Of a DNA stretch of 64,000 bases, positions 808 through 51,835 are shown piece by piece. Under the pieces are notes generated by a model, which was given only the letters and a program-made list of their open reading frames with translations, made no database searches and was not told the origin of the DNA. The DNA is taken from assembly GCF_032062105.1 (NCBI RefSeq), contig NW_026930899.1, forward strand, positions 1 through 64,000, given 5' to 3'. This DNA is from Saccostrea cucullata. Lineage: Eukaryota. Position numbers and translations under genes: made by a program. The first letter of the stretch is position 1; every line of letters begins with the position of its first letter.

Positions 808-2493
808 ATGTCGTCTGGAAATAATGAACCCTGCAGATTGCGGTAGGTATGTTTCATCTAGTATTTCAGCATAAATGTCCATTGCAAAGTTGAGGCTTAC
901 TGTTGATGTTTGTATCTTATTTTATCACTAATTTTTAGTTTAGATGAGAAAGAATGTTGTGCTAATTATTATTGGAGCGACAAGGAGAACGATTGTTTGC
1001 GTAAGTTTAATCATTTGTTTATAACCTTATTGTATGTAATATGATTCTTAAATGTAAGAGGGTAAAGGAGAGGATAACGAATAGAGATCGATCTAAAAGT
1101 TGTCTTTTAAACAATACCATTGTAAATAAGACTTTAAATATAGATCAAAAGAAATGTCAGACGTGGGGTCAGGTGCCTAAGAGGAGTAAGCAATCCCTTT
1201 TGACCGGTAACACCTGTCGTGCGCCATATAAATTGATCAGAGAGATGAATTATTCCTTAGTAAAACTTAATAGAGGAACATGACCTTCATTGACATAAAA
1301 CTTGTCAGTCAAAATGCGTCGCATTCATCAAGATGTATTTCCAACAAACGTCAATTACAGTTCATAGAATTTTTATTTTTAAAATGCTGATTAAGAAGAG
1401 AATAACATTTTTCAGCATGTGAACTTGGATTCTTTGGTGTCAACTGCGATCAACCTTGTCCTTACGGCCAATATGGAAAACTATGTGGGAAACCGTGTAA
1501 ATGTGCAACTGACGAATACTGTGATAGAGTATCGGGATGTGTAACTAATGGTATAACAAATTTTATTTAAATTATCTGTAATAGTAATCACAGAATTTCT
1601 TTAGCAATCTGCTTTCTAAAATAATTAAGAGTATGATAAGATATGATTTTTTATATAAAAAAAGAAAGAACTGTTTGACAAAACTAATTTGAATCATCTA
1701 TGTTTTTTTCCCTTCACACCCAGGAACAACAGTACAAACCTCAACGTACATATTTCATTCTACATCTGTTCCTTCATCAAAACTAGAGAGTACAACTTCA
1801 ACAACGGGATGGACAAAAACGGAATCAACTATAGAGATAGCTGTTAGAGAGTCTACCCTAATACCGACTGGACCAATAAAGGAAGAGATAAATAACAATA
1901 TCGTAGTAATATTAATGGGTGCAGTAATAGCTTTTCTTTTTCTTATAATACTTTTGGCAATTGTTAAGAAATTATGTTCCGCACGTTCAAAGAAAAAATA
2001 TATAAAAAAGGAAAATATATTAGAATTAAATAAGGAAGGTAATGAAATAGAAGTATATCATGAAATAAACATGGATGAAATGTTGGCTAATCAGATAGAA
2101 TTGCCAGATAATCGTTACAACAGAATAATGGACGATGTAGTGCGACCCAAATATTTGCAAATAGGATCCAAAATAGAAAAGGAAACAAAACAAACATATA
2201 ATGAAATTGACAAGGAAAATTCAACTTCAACCGGAAATAATGGAGATTATTTAGAACCGGAGTCAAGTGGGCGAGTGAATGCATATATAGAAGTTATAGA
2301 ACCTTTGATACATAACTCTAACTCTTTAAATAGTGATCAAGATGGTGGAAGCTCCTCAAACAAGTCTGACCGGTCTTATCAGGATACAGGGACTCTAGCA
2401 CAGGGTGACATGTCATGTCCCAACGAAATCAATGATCCAAAATCTCACGAATCGAAGAATAATGAATATCTAGATGTTGTTAATGAGTTATAG
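808..2493 (+). CDS. G1: EGF-like (MEGF10/CED-1/Nimrod-like) single-pass receptor, long ITAM-bearing tail
   Basis: Exons 808-842 (MSSGNNEPCRL), 939-1000 (ECCANYY..DC), 1416-1550 (CELGFFGVNCDQPCPYGQYGKLCGKPCKCATDEYCDRVSGC), 1724-2493 (S/T stalk, TM IVVILMGAVIAFLFLIILLAIV, tail ending EYLDVVNEL). All introns are GT-AG with compatible phases 2,1,1. The first exon is the least certain. Confidence 0.85.
1140..1370 (-). mobile_element. Penelope-like element 3' end fragment (G1 intron)
   Basis: GGGGTCAGGTGCCTAAGAGGAGTAAGCAATCCC...GACCGGTAACACC is a diverged match to the 3' region of the copy at 24553-25268. Confidence 0.6.
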
Positions 2494-7648: not shown

Positions 7649-10600
7649 TATTTATAGAAGGTAACCCGATTGGTGCAAGCACTAGTCTTCCTCTGGGCCC
7701 TCTTTATAACACATATACAATGTATATACACAATAAATACAAATCACAATAAGGAGACAATAAAAAAATGGACAGTACATGCATGTTACCAAATAAATAA
7801 ATAAAAAAAATAAAACATAAACATTTCAGCATAGAGAGAGAGAGAGAAAAAAAAAAGAAAAATCACGTAGAACTATTGCGTTTCACAAGCAAAAAATTTT
7901 CAACACTTTTTTGTAAATATTGTAAGGGATTGGGAATTCCTGATTCTTATTGGTAGCTCATTCCAGATATTAACTCTTGGATATGGTAAAGAATTTTTAA
8001 ATAAGTTAGTTTTATATTTTGGTAATCGCAGTTCGGAGTTTGTTTCTGAGCGTAACGTGTATGATCCAGAGCTTTGAAATTCAAAAAGATTATGCATATA
8101 ATCCGGAGACATACCATTAAATATTTTGAACATTAGAATGCTTTTCTGTAAATATAAAAGTTCATAAACCGTTAACCAGCCTAAAGTGTTAAATAAAGGC
8201 ATGGAAGGTGTATCATATTTTTCATTTAAAATAATCCTAGCCGCTCGTTTTTGTAATCTGTAGACTATCCATGTGCGTTTGAGGACAGTTGCCCCAAATG
8301 GACAGACAATATAAAATTGATGGTAGAATAAAAGCATTATAAAATAGTTTTCTAGTGTGCACTGGAAGAAACTTTTTAATTTTTCGTAAAGTGAATATTT
8401 TATATGTAAGAGTTTTGCAAAGTGCATCTACATGACAAGTATATTGTAGATTATGATCAATGTGAATGCCTAATAATTTGTGCATTTCTACATTTTCAAG
8501 AGTATGTCCGGAAAGTTGTAAATGAAAATTAACATTTTCTAATTTAGATTTCTTTTGTTGTGTTCCCATTAACATACACTTTGTTTTATCAGTATTTATA
8601 ATCATCTGATTTTGTTGGCACCATTTTTGTAGTTGATTGAGTTCATGATTTAGAGTTGTTTCAATATGTGAAATATTATTACCATGAAAATGCATTGTAG
8701 TGTCATCAGCAAACATATCAATATTACAATGTTCAACAGACAATGGTAAATCATTAATATACAATAGAAACAACAAAGGACCTAAAATAGAGCCCTGTGG
8801 CACACCTGCTGTGACTGGCACTGATTCAGATGTATACGCACCAATTTTAACACTTTGCGTTCGATCATATAAGTATGATTGAAACCATTTAATTGATATT
8901 GGATCGAAATGATAGCATTTAAGTTTTCTAATTAGTATATCGTGATTAACAAGATCAAATGCTTTGCTAAAATCTAAATAAGTAATGCCAACAAAATTTC
9001 CTTGATCTATTGCATGCAACCAATTATCGGTTAGTTTTGTGAGAGCTGTCTGGCATGAGTGAAATTCTCTAAATCCAGATTGTGCTTTCATTAGTAAATC
9101 AAAGTGAGAAGTAAAAATACGTATATTTTCTGCTACATGCTTCTCTAAAATTTTCGACATAGTTGGTAAAATTGAGATTGGGCGATAGTTTCCTGGGTCT
9201 GATTTATTGCCCTTTTTGAACAGGGGAGTTACTTTTGCGACTTTTAACTGTGAAGGAAAAGATCCTTTGATTATGCTAGAATTTATTAGGTGTGTTAGTG
9301 GTTTGGATATTACACTGGCTGAAAGTTTAAGCAATCTAGGTCCAAGAAAGTCTATGCCAGCAGATTTGTTTACATCTAGTCTTTTTAACATTTCAGATAC
9401 TTTTTCTTCATTAATCAAGGGAATTTTAAAAAAGTCTTGATCTCCGAGTTTCGTCTCCGTGTATCTTTTCAATTTGTCTGACTCAAATGTAGTAGACGAA
9501 AGATTATTCAACAATTTTTTCGGAATTTGGGCAAAATGTTCATTAAAGGCATTTGCAATATCCTGTAAATTATCAAGATCTAAGCCGTTATATATTATAT
9601 TGGAAGGAGACAAGTTTTTGTCTGATTTTGAGGCCAGCTGATTTAAGTGACCCCACATTTCCTTTGAAGTAGAACTATTTTCAATTACTTCCTTATAATA
9701 TGTAGATTTTGCATTATTTATTAAAGATGTCACTTTGTTCCTCCAAAATCTAAAATTATCCATGTCTCCCTGTTTATGATATTGATCTCGTAAATTCCTA
9801 GCATTATTTATTTCTGGAGTTAACCATTTAGTGCGGAATTCAGATTTCACACGCTTAGTTTTTACTTTTGCATGCTTATTGATTACAGCATTGAAAATAT
9901 CATAAAAACAGTTTAAAATGTCATTAGGGTCATGCAGTAGAATTAATTCATCAAAATTTGCATTGTTTAAATCAAGCAAAAAATCTGTTTCATTAAAATT
10001 TTTGAAGTCACGATATTGTATTTCAGTATGTTTGCCTTTGCGTTGCATGCTGTTAGATCTTCGTGTGGCACATATAGGATAATGATCAGACATCGCTACA
10101 GGGGGTACTGCTATTTCACATATGTTAGCAGGGTGCGTAGTGTAGAAATGGTCAATAAGAGTTTTAGAGCTATTAGTAATTCTTGTTGGGGTGTTAATTA
10201 ATTGTGTTAGTCCAAAATCTACAATTGCAGAAGACCAACTCCGCGGGGGTTCTTTGAGCATATCAATATTGAGATCACCTGCAATAATGAGAAATTGTAT
10301 TTACTGACATGGTCATTTTATTGACCATAGAACTTACATATACGAAAAATGACTTTAAACGAGACTGCTGATACTCTTGATTCGTCAACTTTTTTTGTAG
10401 GTAATTTACCTTGTTGGATTTGCAGACAAGGGTAAATTCAATGATATTCATTTTAAGGTTATTTTTTTCTGAAACCCCTCTTTCAATTTTTGTAAACAAC
10501 ATTTCGAAGTTTTATAGTTATGTAATGCAACAGCAAGCACAAGTTGTAGGAAAGGGAATGTTTTACAAGGAGAAAGTAATGTGAATATATGCAATTGCAT

Positions 10601-12302
10601 ATATACTTCATATTTCCTAATAGAGTGCCCTCCGGGAATATTTGGAATGAATTGCAGCCAGAAATGTCCAAGTAGCACGTATGGGCAATTTTGTGCAAAA
10701 TTGTGTCAATGCCCCCCTGACCGATGCGACAAAAGACACGGTTGTGAAGGTACTCACATTTACACTTTTAACAATTTTTTTATATGTGCTCTTAGTGGGA
10801 CCTTATGATAAGATATCGTAAAAAGAATAAAAAATAGCTCATAAAGATATTATCTTATGTTTTATTTATAAGCAAATACAAATAGAACTACATTTGTACT
10901 CAGAAAATAATCATATTGGAATATTTTGCAGACATAGTTCTGGAGAAGGAAGAAAACTCAGGGCTGTGTGTTTCGTATGTATTGACTTAGATGTTCAATT
11001 GTTTTTAAATTGAAACTGTTGTTTTAACTAAAACAATGAACAAAGTGTGACAAAACACTTATACAAAAATGGCATACAAATAAGATTTGGTTAATAAAAA
11101 TACTGCTTAAAATTCAACATGATAAACATTTCCATTGAAGTTTGTGTCCGTGTTGTTATACCACCAAATTGCTTTGAAAAAAACACTGCAATAAATATTA
11201 TTCATAATAAAAAAGAGGAAATAAATTACATGTTTTAATTATATATTAATAATGAAATAGTAATATAAAGTGTATTATAGAAATATGTAGAAATAATTGG
11301 GTTTACTTAGAATTTATCCCACATCTTAAAACAAACCTTTACTTATATAGTCGAATATTAATTTTCTCTTGTAGGAAAGATGGTGAGCTTGAGTGCTGCT
11401 TGAGCTTTTACAAGACAAATAACACATGCGCAGGTAGTTGTCAATAAAATCCAAGTATAAATAATTTAAATTTTATCTATTTGTTATGATTGCATTGAAA
11501 AAGTGTTCTTAGAAATTCCTCCCTGTTTTGCAACCAAAACATTCTGTATTTTATTTTCTTTAGCCTGTCCAGCTGGGACGTATAACAATAACTGCTCCGA
11601 TCCGTGTCCGCCCGGATACTATGGTGAATTATGTTCTAAAGTATGTGACTGTTCAGAGGCTTCATGTGATAAAGTACATGGGTGTTCTCAAAAAGGTACA
11701 AATAGTTTTCGCTTTAGAATAATTTACAAATACAAAATGTAGGAAAATAAATATATTTTGTTTTCTAAAGTCTGCCCAGCTGGGACGTATAACAATAACT
11801 GCTCTGATCCGTGTCCGCCTGGATACTATGGAGAATTATGTTCTAAAGTATGTGACTGTCCAGAAGATTCGTGTGATAAAGTACATGGGTGCTCACAACA
11901 AGGTACAAGTAGTTTTCACTTGCGATTAATTTACAAATACAATATTTAGAAAAAAACCCAAGCAGATACAATGTTGATATGAGCATTTGATTTACTGCAT
12001 TAATATTTGTGAAACTCCTATTTTTATAGAAATAATTAAATCAGTTACAGATAAATTAATATATCGAAACGTCATGTTTATAAAAAGATATGAAGTGAAA
12101 TTATATTTCTTTGATTGTTTTAGTCTCCGGGACAGAGGTTCCGTTGAATATGATCATCTTTGCTGGAAGTATCACCCTTGTGTTCCTCTTAATAATGACA
12201 ATACTTTTCATAAAGTTTGCTAAACTTCAACGTCTCAGAAGACACGCACCTCTTTCCAACGATTTGACAGATGTGGCAGTTTATTCAGAAGTGAAGGGTT
12301 AG
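6798..12302 (+). CDS. G2: multi-EGF single-pass receptor with signal peptide and short single-tyrosine tail
   Basis: Exons 6798-6942 (MSFSDSKWIYFLAILGFCKL...RCVANYFLDFDNICK), 10624-10749 (EGF), 10932-10974 (..NSGLCV), 11375-11433 (ELECCLSFY..TCA), 11564-11695 and 11771-11902 (duplicated EGF), 12124-12302 (TM, tail ..DVAVYSEVKG*). Phases 1,1,2,1,1,1 are all compatible. Confidence 0.8.
7290..10390 (-). mobile_element. Penelope-like 3' fragment interrupted by a LINE
   Basis: 7290-7607 and 10285-10390 are contiguous in the uninterrupted copy (CAGCATTTGAC.CAAT|GATAAATTGTATTTGCTGAC near 24795-24830). Confidence 0.8.
7608..10285 (-). mobile_element. CR1/L2-group LINE, 5'-truncated in the APE endonuclease
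   Basis: ORF 8237-10261 has APE motifs (AGDLN just upstream, TLIDH, SDHYPI) and RT motifs (YRPISILP, QSGFR, LDFSKAFD, GVPQGSILGPLLF, FADD). One frameshift near 8265 leads into ORF 7900-8427 (RLQKRAARII..WNELP). An (ATT)n tail lies at 7608-7644. Confidence 0.95.
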
Positions 12303-14465
12303 ATCTGAGGTGTGAACAGACAAAAACAATTTATTGTAATCATTTTCTGAATAATTCTGTGATATAGTGTAACAAGTAGTTTGATTATGTTTTATACAGA
12401 TGTACATATATGTCACCATTGAACAAAGAGAAATCAAAAGTGAAATAAAACAAAATGCGAGGAGACGTTTTAAACTAAAAAAGCTAAACACTTTTTTCAT
12501 GTTCCTGCATGTTGCACCCTCAAGATGAAGCTCTGTTTATCAAACACGTTAAAGACCTTACGTGCATCTACAACTTTCTATCGATTCTTAGGGAAAAAAG
12601 TAAAACTGCTGTGCATGAGAAACGTCAGACGTGTATACATGTATTGTGTGATAGCATCTTCAAGACGTGTTGAGATTTAAATATGGATTCTAAAAGACTC
12701 CAAAACACTTCTTAAAATGATATACATGTATATAAAAAATATTTTCCAACATTAGTAACATCAAAACATATTTTTTATACAACCATTTCTCACTATCCAT
12801 GGCATTATCAATTAAGATGCAGACTCTTTGATATTTTAAACAATTGCCTTCCAATACAATAAGAACTCTTTTTTATGAAATAACAAAAAAAAAAAGCAAA
12901 AATGCAAGACACATTTTTACGTACTATGTTTTATATCAACCGTGATGCTTTTGTTGACATATTAATCATATATATATAGTATATAAGATTTGACAGGGGA
13001 GTGTTCCGTCTACTTGTTAATACACGTGACTCACGGCAATCAACAGGGGATGCTAACTTCTGATTGGCTCCTGATACAGCCTCTGGCATTTCATGAGGTC
13101 CCTGTTTATGCCCTGTTTACAGTTTTGTATTATTGATTTCTTAAATCGATCAATAATCGCAAAAATCGATATCTTCACCCTTTTCATTTTTTCTTCTTAT
13201 TTCCCAATGTTTGTTTAGCAGATAAATTAAATGCACGCTTATCATGAGCATATTTGCTCTTGCTCTTACAAAGCTGCAAATGTGCTTCGGGTTCTTATGA
13301 ACTGAATTGTTCATCGGTTTCAATATATAAGAGAACATAATGCAAAAATAATGCAAAAAGTAAAAGTTTTCAATCGTCAGATTGTCGTGTTAATGATTTT
13401 TGAATTTATAAGAGAGAAAAAAACCTTGTCTTTGTATATTAATTGTTCTTTAAAGACCAAGAGAGACCTTCCTGAAAGGGAATGTGAATTGTTTTCTGTA
13501 TGAAGTCAGGTGGTATTGTTTCATACAATCTACTTACTTTTAAGTGACAAATGGGAGTGGGAGTGACAAATTGGAGTGTCTTCTAATGAGTACTTGACTA
13601 ACTGTACTCACCTTTATTTTGCTTTGATCAACAAGTCTTCATCTCGCAGTTTATATTTCAAAACAATAGAAATAAAAAAAAACAATAGGGATAAGAGAAA
13701 AGTCCCTGATAATCATGCAGAATTTCCGTTCTTCTGTCATTGGAAATGCTATATGACGGTATAATCGATATCCGACTTTTGACGAAGAGGGAAATCATAT
13801 TGAACATCATGCCACAGAACTAAATTTATTACCAGACATTGCACAGGCAGTTTTTGAACAAATACTGATAGATAAAATATGACTATAACAAACAACACTT
13901 AAACTCAAAAGTCCATTGAAGTCATACACACAGGGAGCAAAGCTAACAACAAAGGTGCCAAACAAGGGTAAATTACCCATTTCAACCGCTTAAACCTACC
14001 GTGTTCTTCTTGACCTGCAAAGGAAAACGGAGAAATATTAACTGATATGAAAAAAGCAATACATTTTTTTCGGATTTAAGAAATCAAAACTATGATTATG
14101 TCCTTTTTTTAATTTAAAGAAGGGCCAAAGGGTTAATTGCCTATGTCACCTTGACTTTAATTTTTTCAGAGTTATGCATAATTATGTATTTTTAATTGTC
14201 TTCAAAAGGTTCAAATATTGAAAGGTAGCTTAAAAATCATTTTAAAAAGTTAAATCTTTTCGAAATTGTAGGAAAAAAATTCAGTCATTAAATACATTTT
14301 TATCAATATAACATTCATGCTATAATGTTTTTATGCCAGTCTGTATTAGATTTCATATAACTTTCCTGTATTTTTTAATGTATTCCTGAATGTTTACATC
14401 CGTCTCCAAAAAGAGTTTTTTTAAATGATAGTGAGAAGTTTCCTGCTTATTTCTATGTATGAAAA

Positions 14466-16933
14466 ATGAAAAATATCATAAAATGGGTTTACTGTTTTCT
14501 GTTGAACGATAAATACTTGACCTTAAGTACGAATGAAAGCAGTGGAACAACAAGCTGTCCTGTAAATTACTTTTTGGGCGTTCACAAAAATTGCACTGGT
14601 AAGATTTATGTAGTCTATTCTGTTTTCTTTCTTTTAGCCACATTTTAATTAATCATCTTTTTCGAAGAAAAAAGTAAAAAAAAAAATCTTTTAATGTTTA
14701 TTTGCAAGAAAAGTACGTCTTTTCTAAATAAATGAAGAATATTTTGAATAGAGATGAAATAAAATATTTGTACTTAGAGTGTCCTGCAGGGAGCTTTGGC
14801 CACAATTGTAGCGCCCCATGTCCACCTGAATCGTATGGTCGACTGTGTGCAGAGGATTGTAGTGAATGTCCCGCAGATGAGTGCGATAAGGTCACAGGAT
14901 GTCAAGGTATACGATACGTTATATTGAGAGAGAGAGAGAGAGAGAGAGTGTTTGTTTCAAAATTATATATCTGAATATTATAAAGGAATGGTTTACTATC
15001 AATATTTATATATAAATTGCTTAAATACTTTACAGTACATTATGTAATGAAGGATATGAGTCCATAAAACAATACAAAATAGGAGCAGAGCAAACACGGA
15101 CCTTCAAAACATCAGAGATGGGATCATTGCCATGGAGGAATGAGCATTTTACTCGCAATCATTCCTTTATGACCGTAATAGAAAATTAATAAAGAATTAC
15201 CAAAACTTCTGAACAACTTTTACTAAGGCTTTTAATATTTTACATGTTTCCCCCAGAAATCATTTTTCTAATCTTTTGACCCAGACCGTGGAGTTTAACC
15301 CACATTTAAATATTTTAACTTAGGCATAGTTTGTCATAGGTTAGTGTTTGGACTTTAATATTTCACAGGTAGAAGTTTTGTGACAAGTCTTTTCTTTGGG
15401 TAAAACGTTTTCATTCTTGTTCTTCAAGTTTGAATTGGATTTGAGAAAATTATATATTTGTTAAAAGCTGCCATACGGGGACTTCAGTTTTCACAGAGCT
15501 AGAGAATACATTTTTTAAACAGAAGACAATTATTGCTTTCCATATATATTAAAAATGTAACAGAGGATATCCTTTTAAAACAGAAGGAAATTATTTCTGC
15601 TATTTAAAGACTAAACAAAATATACTAGTTACTTTTTAATAAATTTATATAAAAACAATATTGATTAAAGGTAGATAAGGAAATAAATAAAATTATAAAA
15701 AGTACAAGAAAAGTATCTCTAGGATATTTGACACTCAAGTTAAAACAAAGCAGGTTAAAATTGAGAGGTAGTGAAATCGAGAAAAGAAAAAGGAAAACAT
15801 TAAATGTAAAAGATACTAGCCAGTATAATACCTAGCATTCATAATCATTTTATTTATTGATGATAAGTTGCTTACAATTACGGTAAAAATAAATTGTCAT
15901 TCAATGTCTCAGAGGGACTGTTACACATGGAAAGTAAATATCATTAAAGATATACTTTATATAGAATATGTTCTTAAAGAGGCAAGCTATTGGAAAACAA
16001 ATTGATGAAAAAAGGATATCAACTGCCTTGATTGAAGTCATCATCCCTAAGGCTCTATGGTAAATACAATGATCTGGCCGGCAAAGTAAAATATGCCATA
16101 ATTTGTAATGTCACCTAAACTTTTTTAAGAAGAATTAAAAAAAAATAATTAAGCGGTTTGACCTCTTTTAGAGACAAGTCCAGCCCATTGCAATTATTTA
16201 CGTAAACTTGAATCTCTACTACCTCTTGATATTTACATTTTATTTTTACTAATTATAGAATTTTTTGTTCTTGTGGGGAGAATTTCTTCCTTTGTTAAAA
16301 AACTCATAGCTTGACCCGAGCTACAAATGTATATATCCACTCGATATAATTTAAATTATTTTGAATACATTCACATAGAATTAAAAACTCTTTTAAACAA
16401 CTTTGTCTTTTGTGGCTAAGTGGTTCTTTAAAGATCCCAGATGTAAAAATTACTGACTTTATCAGGTATATCATGATAGAATAAAATATAAACGAATGTG
16501 TGATATTTTGGTACATCGTGAGGCATTAAAGTATTACACATTAACTTAAAATTAAATTTTGTCTATATTGATAAATTACATTTTAGTCACAAGTACAGTC
16601 ATTGATGGACAACATGCAACTACTGCCTCTATTCAAACTGAAACAAATGGGACAAATGATTTAATAGAATCAACCTCAGATCGAGCCCCCGTTTCGGATT
16701 CTTCAGGAAGCTCCGATAAAGGAACGGTTTCCGAGTTAATCATTATCAATGGTAGTGTCATCATTTTCTTCCTCGTGATACTCATTATTGTCATGTCTGT
16801 CAGAAAGATCTTTGAGTTCAGGTACTGGAAGAGATGTGTCGCAGCGAGGAACACTCAAACTGCCATAGATGAAACAGTATATGCGGAAGTTTATGAATTG
16901 ACTGAAATAAAAAATGGAGGAATCAAAAAATGA
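14466..16933 (+). CDS. G3: single-EGF receptor, short tail with ITSM-like TVYAEV
   Basis: Exons 14466-14598 (MKNIIKWVYCFLL..SCPVNYFLGVHKNCT), 14778-14906 (CPAGSFGHNC..DKVTGCQ), 16587-16933 (stalk, TM LIIINGSVIIFFLVILIIVMSV, tail ..DETVYAEVYEL..). Phases 1,1. Confidence 0.85.
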
Positions 16934-17699
16934 CATGAGAAAAGACATACACGGAGAAAGTATTATTTACCGGGAAAAAAAGCATATAATATTATTTATG
17001 GCAAAAGATAAAATATAAAAGGAAAATACAATATTGAACACCAACACCATTGTCTTATCACGTTGTCATAAATAAACTTTTTATGTTTCGAAAATAATTT
17101 TATTATGTTTTATTTGAATTTTGAAATGTGATTTCCATTATTTAAGGATATGCGTAATAATTCGAAGTTTAGGTGAAATAGTGTACCGTTGAATCTACCT
17201 TAATAAGTTCTATCACTTTGCTTGTTGATGTTGCACTTGGAAAAAGGCGTACTGGCAAATTATCTAAACGTACAGTTGATGAATAATGGTTACAAAACAG
17301 AAGAGGAGCGAGACTTTTTGAGTTTTAATGACAATGTGTGCATACTAGTATTTCTGATAATCACTACTGGTTGAAATCAATAGAATAACACAAACATCCC
17401 AAACTACACCTAATATCTGAATTGTTATCATTGTCACAAGGTTAAAAAAATTCATATCATTAATCTCTCTTGAAATAACTGCTTTCTTTACATTTTGTGG
17501 AAATTCTATATCAATTTTAATTTAAGAGTTGAAAAGTGGGATTTGTATCTCTCTGTAACATCCCTTCCTGGTACAACAAAAAAAAAACACACATAAAAAA
17601 CCATTAATCAAGAATTCACAAATCTTTTTTCCCCAATTATTTTCCAAGACTTATATATATGTATAGATAAATATGTAATCAGTTTTGGTGAGTGTGTGA

Positions 17700-18790
17700 C
17701 AATATCTCTACATATTTAACTGTGAGAAGATTATTGTATTTTTATTTAAAGCTCTAGTGAGGAAAACAAGAAACATTTAATTGGAGTCAGTAAGAATATC
17801 TAATGTTAATTTTAAATTTCTGTTGAAGTTGCTCTTATCATTTCTTAAGAGTTGAAGGATTAATTTCATTTCTTTCTTGAATTCATTCAAGAATATTGAA
17901 GTAGTAATAATTTTATTTTCATACTTGATGCTGTTTCTTGTTTTCCGTATTGACCACTTGTAAATATAAATCTAGGTGTTAATACAGATTGGAACATTTT
18001 TGGGTTCTCCAGCGAATCCCAATAAAACAAAACATGCATACATCAACTTTGATTGGATTCACAACAGGGATTTTTAATATTATATTTTGCACCACTTCTA
18101 AAAGTGGTTTGACATGTTTTCATCATAAAAAAGATGTTTCTGACTCTCAATATTTGATTTACAGAAAAAGAATTTACCATTTGATAAACCCATTTTACTT
18201 AATTTTTCTTCAGTGTATAAGATATTTTGCCAACATTTCTATTGAAATTCTGGAATCTTTTGTTTTAACCTTACTTCATAAATTGAGCCCCAAATTCTTT
18301 TCCATGTGCTTTCAATTTGCATCAATTTCTCCCATTTTGCTTGAGATTTTGGAGTTTTTTTTTTTGTTTGATACTTTTTGTATATCTTTGAATTTTATAT
18401 CTTCAAAATTTATGAGCTTGTTTGTTTTTCTTACAAATAAAATATTATCATACAGTGCATAATAATTATGTATTTCATTATCTTTTATTTTAACAGTATT
18501 TACTCCCTTCAAGAATGTCAAGATATGATTTAGGTATAGCGGCTTTTATTTTACTGTATTCAAAAATCCAACTCCTTTTATCAAGAAGTTTTGAAAATAT
18601 GTAAGCATTAGTCTTAAAAGTCTTAGTATCTATATCCCAAATATCTCCAATTGTTTTTAAACCACATTTAATAAAAGACATTTTATATAGGCTTTTACCA
18701 CGAAATTGTATAAATTTATTCCAAAAAATCTGACATTTCAAAATGTCATCTTTGCTTTTTGGTTGAAAGTGTGATCTAAATTCTGGCTAA
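17700..18790 (-). mobile_element. Degenerate Tx1/L1-clade LINE ORF2 C-terminal fragment
   Basis: ORF 18490-18741 (IFWNKFIQFRGKSLY..GLKTIGDIWD..KAAIPK) resembles the post-RT region of Tx1/L1 elements. Many stops and frameshifts downstream. Confidence 0.6.
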
Positions 18791-18874
18791 GCCAGAATTC
18801 GCAAATCTAATAGCATTAGTCTTGCTCTTTTTTCAACCTAGATACCCAGGGGCCAAATGGGAGATTTTGAAAGA

Positions 18875-19290
18875 CATGTTGCTTTTTGGTTTTCACTTTC
18901 ACATTGGTCATTTGCCAACATTATTTAAAATTTAGTTAAAAATCATTCTAATACACAGAAGTATTCAGAATCGATATCAAAAAGATGTTTGTGTTTCTTA
19001 TTGACAATACTTATGTGGTTTTTTGAGATCACGTCTTCCAACAATCTATTGGAATTCTCATGGGTACCAATTGCAAGACCTAGATGTGTCAGACTCTGTG
19101 GTATCTTTTATCTCAAGCTTTCCAGGATTTATCGCATCAACGTAGGAATGGTAATTACCAATATTAATTGACAATACGTCGTCGATATATCTTAATCTCG
19201 AGTTGAAGGCCACATCAACTGTTTTTTTTTACTTTTTGCGCATTAGATTTTGCACAATTTCTGCTTCATATGAATACAAAAATAAAAAGG
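18875..19290. mobile_element. Penelope-like RT fragment with internal inversion
   Basis: Plus strand up to QQSIGILMGTNC (~19075), then the adjoining RT segment (LYSYEAE..RYIDDVLSIN..EIKDTTESDTS) on the minus strand. Confidence 0.75.
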
Positions 19291-20314
19291 CTTGGTTTAA
19301 CATTTACTTGAACCTTGCTATATGTTTTATGTTTATAGAGAGTTTTATGAAGTTTCTGAATCAATTAAAGATATGATTACAATATATATTTCGATTGTTT
19401 GGACTATAAGATTTAAAACTGACATATGATGTTGAAGAATACCTGCCTTAAAAAGAGAACTGTGAGTATAAGTTTGATTATTACTTGTAGAATCAAATCC
19501 AGGTTCTTCTACACTACAATTTATATTATGATCCTTACAAATGAAGACAATTAAAGGTTTTTTTTTATCCTCCTAGAACTTAATTTCAAATAATCAAATT
19601 ATTTTATTACTATTATTTTTTAAAGTAAATTAATAATTGATAATATGACTCTATGACTCTATTAAATATGCATAAACAGTTTAATCACATTAATTCAATA
19701 CTATAGTACGTTCTAAAATATTTTCTGTGTAACTTTTACTTTTCTTTAAAGAAAATAGCTTTCTTCTTTTGAAAGAATTAAAAGTAGAATGATTTAAAAA
19801 TTATCAATGTTCATGTATAAATAAAACGTTTTTATTTCAATAAGTCATACCATAAAGAATACGTATGCTTCGTGACAATACACGAAGAAATACATTCTAA
19901 GAGGAATGGCCGAAGTTATTATACTTTTGACAACAAAGAATACGTGTAACTTGTAGCCTTATTCCTATTATTTTTAGTAAAACAATTTAGGGCTAGAATT
20001 GTATTTAAATGAAACTGTAGCCATGCGGTGAGTATTTGACTTAATTTTTTTGCATTATAAACCAAGGTAAAGGAAAAAAAAACCCACCTTTTTTAAAATT
20101 CTCTTCTGGATTGTAATACGGAATTTTATTTAAGAAATGTATGTCTTTCAAACATCATGACATAAACACAACAATTTTATTCAGTTGTGCTAACATATAT
20201 GCATATATATATATTTGTATTTCTGAATATATTCATAAAATCTACATCCGCCTTTATGGAGAGTTATGTCAAACAAAAAAAAAGATGTTTCCTGTTGGAT
20301 TCTATGTAGGAAAA

Positions 20315-20735
20315 ATGAAAACACATATCATAAAATGGATTTGTTGTTTTCTGTTAAACGATAAATATTTGACGTTAACAGACACAGTCAATGAGGCAAA
20401 GGGTTGTCCTGTAAATTACTTTTTCGACGTGGACAAGAAAAATTGTACAGGTAATAATTATTACATCTCGTGGTTTGTTTAATCTTTGACGAAAACAGTA
20501 AGAAAACATTTGATTTTTTCTTCTCATTTTTTGCAAAGAAAGGTCATCTTTCAAAGTAACTGTAGAATATCGCATAATGATTTTATAAAGAATGTTTCTA
20601 CCTAGAGTGTCCTCCAGGGAGCTTTGGCCAAAATTGTAGCGCCCCGTGTCCACCTAAATCGTATGGTCGACTGTGTGCAGAGGATTGTAGTGAATGCCCC
20701 CAAGATGAGTGCGATAAGGTCACAGGATGTCAAGG

Positions 20736-20800
<65 letters not shown>

Positions 20801-22664
20801 TAAGTTGCTTTTATTTTGAAATACAGACTTTGCTGTATGTAACAAGCAATCATTGACTGATGGGTTTTATTCAATTTTCTTTCGGCAATATTTTTCCATT
20901 TCTCCAAATAGGATGTTTACTTTTCATGAATTGTACAGACATACTTCATATATTATTTTTAGTTGAATATTATACAACATATATCCGACAGTTTTTGTTT
21001 AAAATGTCAATTGAATAAGAGGGTGTCAAAATAAAAGGGTCAAAACATATTGACTAGACGGGTTTCACACTCGAAATAAAAGGAAGTATGAACACACTTT
21101 TAATAATATTATTAAATAATGGAAACATTCCCTTCAAAGAAATACAAAAAGGAAGATATCCAATAGTTTTGACAATGTTAAACAATATTTAATTCATAAA
21201 ATTTGATATAACTTACAAATTGTAATTATTTTTTTAAAGAAAATGCTTTCAATGAATCAGGGAAATCGAATGCACTTTAGGAATTTGAAAATTCTAAAGA
21301 AAATATGAATTTATTCGTCCTGAGATAATATCACCTTAAATATCCTTTTAAAAGTAACGCTACATAAATAATAACAAACATATACGTTATAAAATGATGT
21401 AAAGATGCTGGGAAATCAAAAAAAAGTAAAGATAAAGGATGGGTCCATGACTTTATACTTTTGACAGGAAATATATTTCCAGTAGAAAGTTTTTACACTT
21501 GGATACTCAGGCATCATAATATACCCAAAATAATTTTGAGCTGTTCTAAAAATAGAAGCAAACAGATAATAGATTTTCATCAAAACCCCATCCCCAGGAA
21601 AACAAATATACAAAACAAAAAAGACAAGCAAAAGAAAAAATAACAAATTAACCACAAAAACAGATGTGGGAATCAAATTAACCATTTCTAACTGCTAATC
21701 AACATGCTTAAACAATGGTGTGTGAATTCAAAATTTCGAAATCAAAAAAAAAAATATCCCGAAACCCATCACCTTTGATTGGAGAATAGTTGTCTACGTT
21801 TATATCGATTTTGCTATATTGTATTTTGGTCTGTTTTTGGTGTATGTATATATTTATTTTTCAGGGACATCTACAAAACCTGAATTTTACCGATCGTCTA
21901 CAACAATATCATCAGCAGTAACATCAGTGTTTGAGATATCATCATCAATACTACCAACATCCTTGTCGACAGACAGATTAACCACAATTTTAAAGAGTAA
22001 ACCATCACAACCATCAACTGTAGAAACAAAGGACGAGCCTAGCATTTTAACTATAATTCTGATAGTGGTGGGTTTTGCTGCTCTTATCATAATAATATTG
22101 ATTGCTATTCTTTTTATTGTTGTGAGACGACTATGGGTTCTACATACCAAAAGAACATATCATAGAACCGAAAATGAATCAAAACACTTAAAGGAAGGAA
22201 ACGAATCGGGGGAATATCAGGAAATTGAAATAGATAGAAATCTGGTTATCCAAAGCGAAGTATCAGGACACCGCTATAACACAATAATGCAGGAAATGGA
22301 TCAACCTATTGGTACCAAGTATGAAGAGCCTCGATCCAAAATAAATCAGGAAATGAAAACACTGTATTCTCATTACAGGGAAATAGACGAAGAAAACTCT
22401 TCCTCGACAGGGAATAATGGTGGATATATAGAGCCAGAATCAAGTGGGCAAATACATGCCTATCTTGAAGTTATAGAACCTATAGTACATAGTTCTGATT
22501 CAGCTTATAGCTACAATGATGGCGTTAGCTTAAAATGTCATAGGTCCGACCAAAATTCTGATCATATCGAAGAAAACGATGATAACTATTTGAGTGCATC
22601 CAATGCTATTGAAATACATGAAGCAAAAGACAATGATTATTTAGACGTTGTCCACAATAAGTGA
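20315..22664 (+). CDS. G4: single-EGF receptor, G3-like ectodomain plus G1-like long tail
   Basis: Exons 20315-20450 (MKTHIIKWICCFLL..GCPVNYFFDVDKKNCT; alternative ATG at 20285), 20606-20734 (EGF), 21865-22664 (S/T stalk, TM ILTIILIVVGFAALIIIILIAILFIVV, tail ending DYLDVVHNK). Confidence 0.87.
20739..20798. repeat. (GA)n microsatellite just after the G4 EGF exon; counterpart at ~14926-14948 after the G3 EGF exon
   Basis: Direct inspection. Confidence 0.95.
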
Positions 22665-48603: not shown

Positions 48604-48944
48604 TAAAGAATGATTCCCCCGGGGAAACCTTTTGATTCGAATGGCTAAGTTATTATTAAAAATAAAAGAATTATTTACATGTAACGTAAATATGAATGGA
48701 AGTTTTAATCCTTACGTATATTAAATTTCATCTAGTTTTTATATCCAGAAAACCCAACAACTATGCAAATTTGATCAGCTGGGAAATGTCCAAATTTTTA
48801 AACGTGTTCCTTAGCTTTCGTCCAGAAAACATTATAAATCAGGAGTATTTCTTTGCAGATAGAGGAGAAGGGATAAAAACTAATAAAATGCTTACATAGC
48901 GTCAAATGCATAGAGGTTTATTCAGTTTGAAAATTTTGTGTTTG

Positions 48945-49700
48945 TATTTGCTGACAATGTCATTGTTTCGACCATAAAACTTACGAAATGATGACTTTAA
49001 ACGAGACTCTTACTATTCTTGTTTCATCAACTAGCCTGTTTGTCAATAATTTACCTCGTTCTAGAAATTGTTCATACATAGAGCATGGTCTTGCATATCG
49101 AAACAACTGAGATATATAAACTCCGTATGCAGGTAATGAAGGTATATTGCTGCATAAGTAAGGAAAATTGACGATAGAAAAGTTTAAGTCATCACGTTTA
49201 TCATAGATCTTGGTTGTTATTTTACAATAAGCGTCTTTCACAAGTAAAAAATCTAAATATAAAACAGATGTGCCAGCTTTGTGTACCCTTTATCTCAAAC
49301 TCACCAGGATATATCGTATCGAAATAGGAATGGAAATTGCCATAATGATTGTTATTGTCAATACCTCATCAATATATCTAATTGTCAAGTTGAAGGTCAC
49401 CACAAGTGTTTTCTTCTTTTCACGCAGAAGATCTTGCACAAACTCTTCTTCATATGACTACAAAAATAGGTCTACTAATAACGGAGCGCAATCGCTACCC
49501 ATGGGAATTCCAAAAGATTGTTGGCCCTGTTCAACGTAGATATTGTCAATCAGAAACACAAGCATTTTTTGATGTCAACTTTAGAGCACTTGTGTGTACA
49601 ATCAGCATGAATTTTACCTAAATGATTTTGCAAATGATGAATGACAAAGTAAGTTAATTTACGAGTTCCATTTTTATTGATAAAGCAGCTGTCAATGGTC
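48945..49700 (-). mobile_element. Degenerate Penelope-like RT fragment
   Basis: ORF 48981-49241 (TTKIYDKRDDLNFSIVNFPYLCSNIP..AYGVYISQLFRYAR) with a GIPMG motif near 49495-49510. Confidence 0.85.
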
Positions 49701-50075
49701 TCTTTTATTATGAAAAATGTTTTAACTGAACTGAAAAATTTCCTGAAGCGTTTAAAATTTGTACTTTTGAATGAAAATTTATAAAGAAAATGCAGCATTT
49801 TGGAAACATCTCGGATTAAAAACCTTCAAACAAGCACCGATTTATTAATAAAAATGTCTACTACGGGGTACCTTGAACGTGTTTGCTAGGAACTGCAAAT
49901 CTGCTAGAATTTTTCTAGTATAATATAGTACATGTAAAATATTTACTTAAAACGGAAGAACATCTTTATTTTAATAAATTATCGTCTTTTCGGGAAGTTT
50001 CCTTTAATTTCCCATTTTTCAGATTAAATTTCATATGAATTTACTTTAATTTTAAATATAAGAATATAGGTGGAT

Positions 50076-50508
50076 ATGGATTACACTGTGATTAAACTGT
50101 TTGCTCTCTGGATGAGCATTTATACACAAGTAAGAGTATATTGTGATAACACTCATCCTGACGAACATGGAGAGTAAGTAGAAGTTTGCTTTTCAAATGT
50201 TTATAATGATTTGAAGTGTATCATTGACTTGGATAGATGTGTTTATCGTATTTATTTATTACGATTAAAACTATATATATTCTTTTCTCAGGTTTAACTG
50301 CTGTTTGCACTTCTTTTTATATGATGGAGAATGTTGAGGTACGTAATAGGAATAGCATGTAGTATAAGGACTTAAAATATCAAGTCGTCATTTTGTTTGA
50401 AATATTGTTATATAAAGCCTTTTTTCAGAGTGTCCGTTCGGTTTTTTTTTCGGACAAAATTGTGCTCTTCGGTGTTACCATCCTTACTATGGTCGACTAT
50501 GTCACTCT
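50076..50508 (+). pseudogene. G10: pseudogenised duplicate of G11
   Basis: Exons 50076-50173 (signal peptide), 50292-50338 (NCCLHFFLYDGEC*, TGA at 50335 where G11 has CGA), 50429-50508 (EGF truncated at a MITE). Exon 1 and 2 sizes (98 and 47 nt) are identical to G11. Confidence 0.85.
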
Positions 50509-50750
50509 CTTGAGTATTCATGCGTCATTTTAAAATTTGTTTTAGTGGCAATTTTTAGTTGGATATGGAGTTGATACTTTATATGGACGATTTGTATAAA
50601 TAAAGGGCACTGATATATGAATAGATCAAATAGCAACAGCAAGATCTTCATGATTAAAAAGAGACTGTTACTGTAATGTGTTAGCAACCTTTTGTTGAAG
50701 CAACCATAGAATCGTTGTCGGTACATCCCATGACGTCATGAATACTCAAG
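50509..50750. mobile_element. MITE truncating the G10 EGF exon
   Basis: TIRs CTTGAGTATTCATG(A)CGTCA / TGACGTCATGAATACTCAAG. Confidence 0.75.
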
Positions 50751-50787
50751 TAATATTTTCTTTGAATATAAAATAAAAATATCTATA

Positions 50788-51835
50788 AACAAGACATGTT
50801 TGTAAAACACTTATGCCCCCTCCCCCCAAAATTGGAATTTTTCTAAGTCCAAAAGGGCATAACTTTGTCAAAATGGCGCGATGATACCCCAAACAGAACT
50901 TGACCTAGATATTCATCTGATCAATCTTTATACTAAATTTCATTTCAGTATGTGCAACCTTTGCAAATAAAATGAACGGAAATTGCACATAATTGGAATT
51001 TTTATAAGTCCAAGGGACATATCTCTAAGAAAAATGGCGCCATCATACCCAAAACAGACTTTGACCTAGATATTATTCTGATATATCTGTATACCAGATT
51101 TAATTTCAATATGTGCAACGGTTATAAAGAAAATGAACGGAAGCTAAGTGGACCGACAGACCGACAGACATACCTACCGACAGACTAACCGATAGACAGC
51201 AGCAAAGCAATAATTATGTCCTCCGTTCTTCGAATGGTGTGTTCCCGTTTTGCACACATTTGTAATTAGGTATAGAACAATAGGTGTGAAGTGTGTTTTG
51301 ATAGCAATTATAGTCTGATTTCTGGTTTGGATTTACCTGGATTTACCTGTGAATACCTGTTTTAGCTTAATGTATTCTTAAGAGGTTTAATACAATTTTA
51401 TAAGCATTTTATTAAAATTCTTTATATATTTATGGGAAAATATTTGATTTTATTGAATAAATTATTATTTGATTCATATTATTTATTATTAAGTCCAATT
51501 TCTTAAAAAAAAAGAATATGTACTTTTCAATCTTGATATAATTCTAAATGAATTAAAGATATTAACATATAATAAAGAAAATAATGAATAAAAATTAATT
51601 TGAAAAGATGTTATGATAAGATCATCAGATAAATACATTAACTTTGTATTTATTCTCTTCTTTTTTTCACTATAAGTTCATCTTTCACATACTTACTAAG
51701 CTAAGTATAGTATAGACTATAGCAATTAAGCAATCATCTCACCTGGTCAAATTCCCACTTTTCACACATTTTTTAATTACCTGTAATTAAATGTGTGCAA
51801 AAGGGGAACAAACCCTTCGAATGGGGGCATAATAA
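50788..51835 (+). mobile_element. HINE/Helentron-like element split by a TIR element
   Basis: AAACAAGACATGTTTG start, two ~170-bp core repeats, a GACAGACC microsatellite, and a terminal hairpin completed by GGGGGCATAAT after the insertion. Confidence 0.65.
51236..51814. mobile_element. Non-autonomous TIR element with 8-bp TSD (Merlin- or Mutator-like termini)
   Basis: TIRs GGTGTGTTCCCGTTTTGCACACATTT / AAATGTGTGCAAAAGGGGAACAAACC, with an exact TSD CTTCGAAT at 51228-51235 and 51815-51822. Confidence 0.85.

What the first reader, a model, noticed from the sequence alone, without database searches (positions are those of the whole stretch)
14466..22664. G3/G4 are a receptor pair: near-identical EGF exon, very different tails, and a gene-conversion signature
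Seen: the 129-nt EGF exons (14778-14906 vs 20606-20734) differ at only 7 positions by my count (2 synonymous; amino-acid changes A/P, H/Q, E/K, A/Q). Exon 1 and intron 1 of the same genes are visibly much more diverged, with many synonymous changes and indels. Homology stops at a (GA)n tract just after the exon in both genes. G3 has a ~40-aa tail with TVYAEV; G4 has a ~175-aa multi-tyrosine tail. Established: vertebrate paired receptors such as Siglec-5/14 and Siglec-11/16 keep ligand-binding exons homogenised by gene conversion. Inference: the same ligand gives different signalling output, maintained by exon-restricted conversion.
Basis: partly seen in the sequence, partly recalled or inferred. 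Interest (0 to 1): 0.87.

Follow-up and report, generated by a model that had tools for sequence, protein, structure and literature searches.

The report
Oyster same-head, two-tail receptor pair
Two neighbouring rock-oyster receptor genes share an almost identical outer EGF-like exon but end in a short or a long tyrosine tail; a related oyster joins one head to the same two tail types by alternative last exons and by a fresh duplication, so this looks like a reshuffled paired-receptor system whose ligand and signalling are untested.

Summary
In detail: the 129-nt EGF exons of G3 and G4 (Saccostrea cucullata) differ at 7 sites (2 synonymous; A/P, H/Q, E/K, A/Q). Synonymous divergence is 0.07, against 0.43 in exon 1 (Fisher p=0.009). 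The identity step falls at the splice acceptor. Thirteen family pairs with equally diverged introns give 0.16-0.29, so against that baseline the signal is only moderate (p about 0.06). One recent non-allelic exchange is likely (~0.7); ongoing 'maintenance' and 'same ligand' are not shown, and post-exchange pN/pS is 0.7. New here: both tails are ancient exon classes (short S, long L). In Ostrea edulis the matching cluster has head-L-S units, which RefSeq annotates with two alternative last exons. It also has an independent head-S/head-L gene pair made by one out-of-register tandem duplication, with no conversion needed. So G3/G4 are one product of a head/tail-shuffling array of SCARF1/MEGF-like mini-receptors. 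Polarity is unclear: G4 has lost the ITAM-like pair seen in other L tails, and G3's ITSM is not kept in O. edulis. The scan noted another paired-type locus in this genome (s1-700980, not checked here).

The parts
14366..14465 (+). G3 upstream/5' UTR stretch homologous to G4 20215-20314 (71% identity); 5' limit of detectable G3/G4 homology
   Evidence: local score 74 vs shuffles 18.7; not significant further upstream
14466..14598 (+). G3 exon 1: weak signal-peptide-like start plus the first two cysteines of the module
   Evidence: RefSeq P0003; second contig C20947 carries it
14599..14777 (+). G3 intron 1 (phase 1), 73% to G4 intron 1 in aligned columns
14778..14906 (+). G3 EGF-like exon (8 Cys, SCARF1/Tie2/MEGF-type repeat), 122/129 identical to G4
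   Evidence: spliced-looking contig ends at 14906
14926..14948 (+). (GA)n tract 19 nt after the G3 EGF exon
16587..16933 (+). G3 last exon, short-tail class S: Ser/Thr stalk, uncharged TM, 43-aa tail with TVYAEV; groups with the O. edulis S exons
   Evidence: S tree 100/99
20315..20450 (+). G4 exon 1
   Evidence: RefSeq P0001; contig 20335-20448 in run X2
20451..20605 (+). G4 intron 1
20606..20734 (+). G4 EGF-like exon
20739..20798 (+). (GA)n tract 4 nt after the G4 EGF exon
21865..22664 (+). G4 last exon, long-tail class L: Ser/Thr stalk, uncharged TM, 179-aa tail with 12 Tyr (6 YxxPhi, one ITIM-consensus, ITAM-like pair degenerate)
1723..2493 (+). G1 last exon: the other L-class tail in the window (44% aa to G4, pS 0.70), keeps an ITAM-like pair
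12125..12302 (+). G2 last exon: distant S-like short tail (AVYSEV)

Best explanation
G3 and G4 are two of about 11 tandem mini-receptors (cysteine-rich SCARF1/MEGF-like head, mucin-like stalk, one TM, tyrosine tail) in S. cucullata. All junctions are phase 1 and stalk+TM+tail sit in one last exon, so heads and tails are exchangeable modules. Two tail classes, short S and long L, predate the Saccostrea/Ostrea split (shown). An old duplication of one head (exon 1 pS 0.43) gave S and L a head each. It started from a head-L-S unit or from an out-of-register [S-head] duplication; O. edulis shows both arrangements, but the route in Saccostrea is inferred. Later, one non-allelic exchange (gene conversion, or an equivalent double unequal crossover) copied the EGF exon between the two genes. 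It was bounded by the diverged intron 1 on the left and the end of homology at the GA tracts on the right (inferred, ~0.7). Most likely function (inferred): cell-surface recognition receptors with overlapping but not identical ligand range. G3 has a single SH2-docking ITSM-like site (SHP-2-type phosphatase, dampening). G4 has a multi-site Src-kinase/SH2 scaffold. This resembles the way Draper-II and Draper-I isoforms work.
For: Synonymous contrast, Fisher p=0.009. Change-point at the acceptor. G3/G4 have the lowest pS (0.07) of 14 pairs with upstream-intron identity <=0.75, others 0.16-0.29. Control pairs show EGF pS mostly not below exon-1 or tail pS. O. edulis cluster order is headA-L-S x3, headB-S, headB-L, and elsewhere headA-L-S, headB-L. 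RefSeq lists 337-aa (L) and 222/207-aa (S) products from one start, and each headA-unit L exon has AATAAA about 20 nt after its stop. An exact head-to-tail duplication 48648-63191 to 63193-73990 made B-S/B-L. Module-wise mosaic pS in both species. Both genes are intact, with exon-limited contigs in two runs.
Against: Only 28 synonymous sites; against the family baseline (about 6 expected) the deficit has p of about 0.06 (my Poisson arithmetic), and the pair was chosen after the fact. No orthologue of the G3/G4 head was found outside this genome, and the EGF tree does not tie G3/G4 to O. edulis head A. No remnant L or S exon lies between or after G3/G4. The ITSM hydrophobic residue is Ala in O. 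edulis S tails and G4 lacks a canonical ITAM. No ligand or signalling data.
Confidence: 0.6

Rival explanations
1. One reading: a true paired receptor whose ligand-binding exon is kept the same by repeated, selected exon-restricted conversion, so one ligand gives opposite outputs.
For: Tract coincides with the exon; different tails; same-head S/L pairing recurs in O. edulis; in DNA run X1 depth piles on the G4 head and is low on the G3 EGF bin, a weak hint only since the tool says depth is no copy number.
Against: Only one event visible. pN/pS in the exon is 0.73 with a charge reversal. A contig from another sample differs at 7/118 in the G3 EGF exon versus 5/531 in neighbouring exons, p=0.002, and young O. 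edulis EGF copies carry 4-8 replacement against 0-1 silent changes: heads diversify rather than stay locked. Exon 1, part of the same cysteine module, is not homogenised.
Confidence: 0.22
2. No exchange: an ordinary old head duplication; the low synonymous count in one short exon is sampling noise or local constraint.
For: 2 versus about 6 expected from family controls is marginal; pS scatters between exons in both directions in control pairs, e.g. G2 vs its C3168 copy 0.04 in exon 1 and 0.25 in the EGF exon; post hoc choice among about 11 genes.
Against: Exon 1 of the same pair has pS 0.43-0.53; no control pair with similar flanks goes below 0.16; no general synonymous constraint on these exons.
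Confidence: 0.15
3. Assembly or polishing artefact: reads of one exon were merged into both loci.
For: No record spans both genes; the assembly is fragmented with haplotigs.
Against: A collapse would give identity, not 7 differences; the shared tract is only about 135 nt between unique flanks; a second contig (97.5% over 8.7 kb) has G3-type letters at both diagnostic sites it reaches; both RefSeq models are intact.
Confidence: 0.03

Closest known systems
Vertebrate paired receptors Siglec-11/16 and Siglec-5/14
   Same: Adjacent genes, near-identical ligand-side sequence, different signalling ends; a microsatellite marks one boundary of the similar region in SIGLEC11/16 (PMC5701461).
   Different: There the converted region is about 2 kb with upstream DNA, introns and several exons, recurs in every primate tested, and ligand binding was measured. 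Here it is one 129-nt exon, one event, no ligand data. Unrelated fold; no charged TM residue for an adaptor (activating Siglecs use DAP12, own knowledge).
Drosophila Draper-I / Draper-II (CED-1/MEGF10 family)
   Same: MEGF-type EGF ectodomain with alternative cytoplasmic ends, ITAM versus ITIM recruiting Corkscrew (PMC4503800); closest analogue of the O. edulis head-L/head-S isoforms.
   Different: Draper has many EGF repeats and an NPxY motif in one gene; these are one-module mini-receptors in a large array, no NPxY in any tail scanned, and in Saccostrea the two tails sit in separate genes.
Botryllus fester co-receptors (FcoR)
   Same: Invertebrate clustered receptors with tyrosine motifs; some loci swap ITIM and hemITAM by alternative splicing (PMC12065747).
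   Different: Ig-type two-chain receptors with a known allorecognition role; gene conversion is not mentioned in that review.
SCARF1 / PEAR1 / MEGF10-like EGF repeats (bivalve expansions)
   Same: Family profile matches Tie2 EGF repeats (E 6e-10) and SCARF1 (E 1e-8); best fold hit SCARF1, not significant; oyster 'MEGF10-like' transcripts respond to Perkinsus infection (PMC9892467).
   Different: A single 10-Cys module instead of a long array; G3/G4 exons hit no Pfam family on their own.

Membership tests
Paired immune receptors (Siglec-11/16 type) | Linked genes with highly similar ectodomain and different intracellular ends | tested here: met
   5.8 kb apart; EGF exon 90% aa; tails non-alignable. 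Exon 1 is only 64% and the stalks differ.
Paired immune receptors (Siglec-11/16 type) | Homogenisation by gene conversion, recurrent across lineages | tested here: inconclusive
   One recent exchange likely; no orthologues to test recurrence.
Paired immune receptors (Siglec-11/16 type) | One inhibitory (ITIM/ITSM) and one activating (ITAM or charged TM plus adaptor) member | tested here: inconclusive
   G3 has an ITSM-consensus site; G4 has no canonical ITAM, one ITIM-consensus site and no charged TM residue.
Paired immune receptors (Siglec-11/16 type) | Shared ligand | not testable with these tools
   No ligand known; 4 replacements in the shared exon.
Paired immune receptors (Siglec-11/16 type) | Co-expression in the same cells | not testable with these tools
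   Exon-limited contigs of both genes occur in runs X2 and X3; run kind and tissue are not on record.
CED-1/MEGF10/Draper/SCARF1 engulfment receptors | SCARF1/MEGF-type EGF repeats | tested here: met
   Profile hits SCARF1 and Tie2; AlphaFold2 model pLDDT 88.7, top Foldseek hit SCARF1 at E 0.37.
CED-1/MEGF10/Draper/SCARF1 engulfment receptors | Long multi-EGF ectodomain and, for CED-1/Draper, an NPxY motif | tested here: not met
   One module; no NPxY. Works like them at most; not a member proper.

The most novel reading that the evidence does not exclude
Oysters keep a modular paired-receptor system: the same EGF head is wired to two ancient tail exons, by alternative last exons in Ostrea and by separate genes in Saccostrea, and once the isoforms are split into genes, exon-restricted conversion replaces splicing as the way to keep both tails on one ligand.
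Probability: 0.25. Interest if true: 0.78.

Novelty: new variant of a known kind. Interest (0 to 1): 0.5.

Why it matters
How activating/inhibitory receptor pairs first arise is usually inferred from old vertebrate pairs. This oyster cluster holds several stages side by side: one head with two alternative last exons, a fresh duplication with a readable junction that makes a same-head pair, and an older pair with a likely exon exchange. That makes the origin and upkeep of paired receptors testable in a mollusc. If no shared ligand or opposite signalling is found, it is ordinary birth-and-death shuffling in a very large bivalve gene family.

Tried and rejected
Orthologues of the G3/G4 head in other species: none from two word-index searches, one full HMMER scan or the metagenome scan. 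A third copy in the own genome to polarise the exchange: only a haplotig. Distant paralogues side with G4 at 3-5 of 7 sites and with G3 at 1-2, too far to give a direction. G4 as a recent chimera from G1: not supported, since G1/G4 tail pS is 0.70, as far as to Ostrea, and the L tree does not join them. G2's short tail as the duplication partner of G3's: rejected, G3 groups with Ostrea S exons. Remnant L or S exons near G3/G4: none. Reads: the letters of the relative's EGF exon were not shown and no joints between exons were listed, so cross-species clustering and splicing could not be read. Pfam and single-sequence PDB searches were blank. Paper searches found no description of this oyster arrangement; the library is incomplete.

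Full report
Observation. The window (no N; Saccostrea cucullata by the RefSeq names of its own proteins) holds about 11 tandem small EGF-type membrane-protein genes; the exon type gave 150 scored matches genome-wide, a lower bound. G3 is 14466-14598 / 14778-14906 / 16587-16933 (202 aa) and G4 is 20315-20450 / 20606-20734 / 21865-22664 (354 aa); both equal the RefSeq proteins. The EGF exons differ at 7 of 129 sites, 2 silent, with A/P, H/Q, E/K and A/Q. Homology runs from about 100 nt upstream of the ATG to 4 nt into intron 2. G4's GA tract starts there; G3's starts 15 nt later. Intron 2 and the last exons do not align.

Is the exon younger than its neighbours? Synonymous differences are 2/28.5 in the EGF exon and 8/18.6 in the unambiguous part of exon 1 (Fisher p=0.009), while replacement rates are alike (0.05, 0.07). 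Against intron 1 p=0.028, and the best change-point lies at the acceptor, 14775. In control paralogue pairs from this genome the first G2-type and G1-type EGF exons have pS 0.24-0.28, no lower than exon 1 or tail, so the exon type is not synonymously constrained. Calibrating on flanks, 13 other pairs with upstream-intron identity of 0.75 or less have pS 0.16-0.29 (median 0.22); G3/G4 at 0.07 is the lowest. That baseline predicts about 6 changes, and 2 or fewer has a Poisson chance of about 0.06 (my arithmetic). It also shows that introns here diverge faster than exon pS, so the intron contrast is weak evidence. With the post hoc choice of pair, I put a recent non-allelic exchange at about 0.7. 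Conversion and a double unequal crossover give the same product and cannot be told apart here. An exon-sized tract needs no special mechanism, since exchange tends to stop where homology breaks (established knowledge).

Assembly. A second contig, 97.5% identical over 8.7 kb, carries the G3 head and G3-type letters at the two diagnostic sites it reaches, though it ends inside the exon. A collapse would not leave 7 differences. No record spans both genes, so long reads remain the formal test.

Where the pair comes from. The G4 tail led to the matching cluster of Ostrea edulis. Stitched, it reads headA-L-S three times, then headB-S, headB-L; a second stretch reads S, headA-L-S, headB-L. L is the G4/G1-type last exon and S the G3-type (S tree 100/99), so both classes predate the genus split. 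In two headA units RefSeq lists two products from one start, 337 aa ending in L and 222 or 207 aa ending in S. The lengths match head plus S, no head exon was found between L and S, and each headA-unit L stop is followed by AATAAA within about 20 nt. This is one head with two alternative last exons, on annotation that I could not check against reads. The headB-S / headB-L pair has the same layout as G3/G4 and arose by one head-to-tail duplication of a segment holding the S exon and head B: 48648-63191 repeats at 63193-73990 at mostly 89-96% identity, with a clean junction 208 nt into intron 2, while the second stretch keeps the unduplicated order. So a same-head, two-tail pair arises here without conversion. 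pS is mosaic by module in both species, and contig C3168 shows a further re-joining of a G2-type head to G1-type DNA. The route to G3/G4 itself is inferred: no tail remnants survive. The G3/G4 EGF exon shares cysteine spacing with head A, but the tree does not resolve the link, and their exon 1 looks more like that of G2.

Same ligand? Not shown. The cysteine module spans exon 1 and the EGF exon (10 Cys; confident model, pLDDT 88.7; profile hits to SCARF1 and Tie2), and only the EGF exon is shared. After the exchange pN/pS is 0.73, with a charge reversal. Young Ostrea EGF copies carry 4-8 replacement and 0-1 silent changes. A contig from another sample differs from G3's EGF exon at 7/118 but from neighbouring exons at 5/531 (p=0.002); its letters were not shown, so it may be a divergent allele or a mosaic. 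These heads look fast-changing, as recognition domains do.

Different output? G3's 43-aa tail has one ITSM-consensus site. The tyrosine is kept in all S tails, but the +3 residue is Ala in Ostrea. G4's 179-aa tail has 12 Tyr and 6 YxxPhi, one of ITIM consensus. The ITAM-like pair present in G1 and the Ostrea L tails has lost its second half in G4. Neither TM is charged. Different SH2 docking is likely; which member activates is open. The signal peptide is weak by hydropathy and was not tested with a predictor.

Comparison. It works like Siglec-11/16-type pairs (PMC5701461) and, more closely, like Draper-I/II (PMC4503800) and Botryllus FcoR splice switches (PMC12065747). Membership of the paired-receptor class is met for layout only; recurrence of conversion and polarity are inconclusive, and ligand and co-expression untestable. 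It is not a CED-1/Draper member proper (one module, no NPxY). I found no paper on this oyster arrangement, in an incomplete library.

Handling notes. My spliced models were joined only inside scripts for checking and were not sent to any search; window searches went exon by exon by reference. Whole proteins were used only as stored database entries by id (P0001-P0003 and later hits). 

Verdict. Observation confirmed; interpretation partly supported. A real, modular same-head/two-tail system with a probable single exon exchange; interest 0.5.

Noticed in passing
L046/L044/L045/L042/L043/L004 (O. edulis OX387705.1, about 102.36-102.52 Mb): Repeated head-L-S units annotated with alternative last exons, and a young out-of-register duplication that created a headB-S / headB-L gene pair.
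   Followed up: yes
L040:5360-6630 (G000 contig C3168): A G2-type short-tail exon is cut just after its TM (stop follows) and joined to G1 intron DNA, a G1-type EGF exon and an L tail: a possible tail-less form plus a long-tail form behind one G2-type head.
   Followed up: partly
window 14789-14906, run X3: A spliced-looking contig differs at 7/118 in the G3 EGF exon against about 1% in neighbouring exons: possible allelic hypervariability or mosaic allele.
   Followed up: partly
L043 about 10866-11700: About a dozen tandem 56-62 nt partial copies of the head-A small cysteine exon precede the intact exon in O. edulis.
   Followed up: no
window 11547-11954: G2 has a tandemly duplicated EGF exon with flanks (88.6%); its C3168 paralogues have a single copy.
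   Followed up: partly
window 8237-10261 (-): A 674-aa reverse-transcriptase-like ORF of a non-LTR element lies inside a G2 intron and is shared with haplotig C20947.
   Followed up: no
window 20800-20805: A consensus donor GTAAGT sits right after G4's GA tract; its use would add 65 nt and shift the frame.
   Followed up: no
window 14000-14800 vs L039: The haplotig differs at 19 of 500 sites just upstream of G3 but has no substitution over exon 1's 3' part and intron 1; about 1-2% elsewhere.
   Followed up: no
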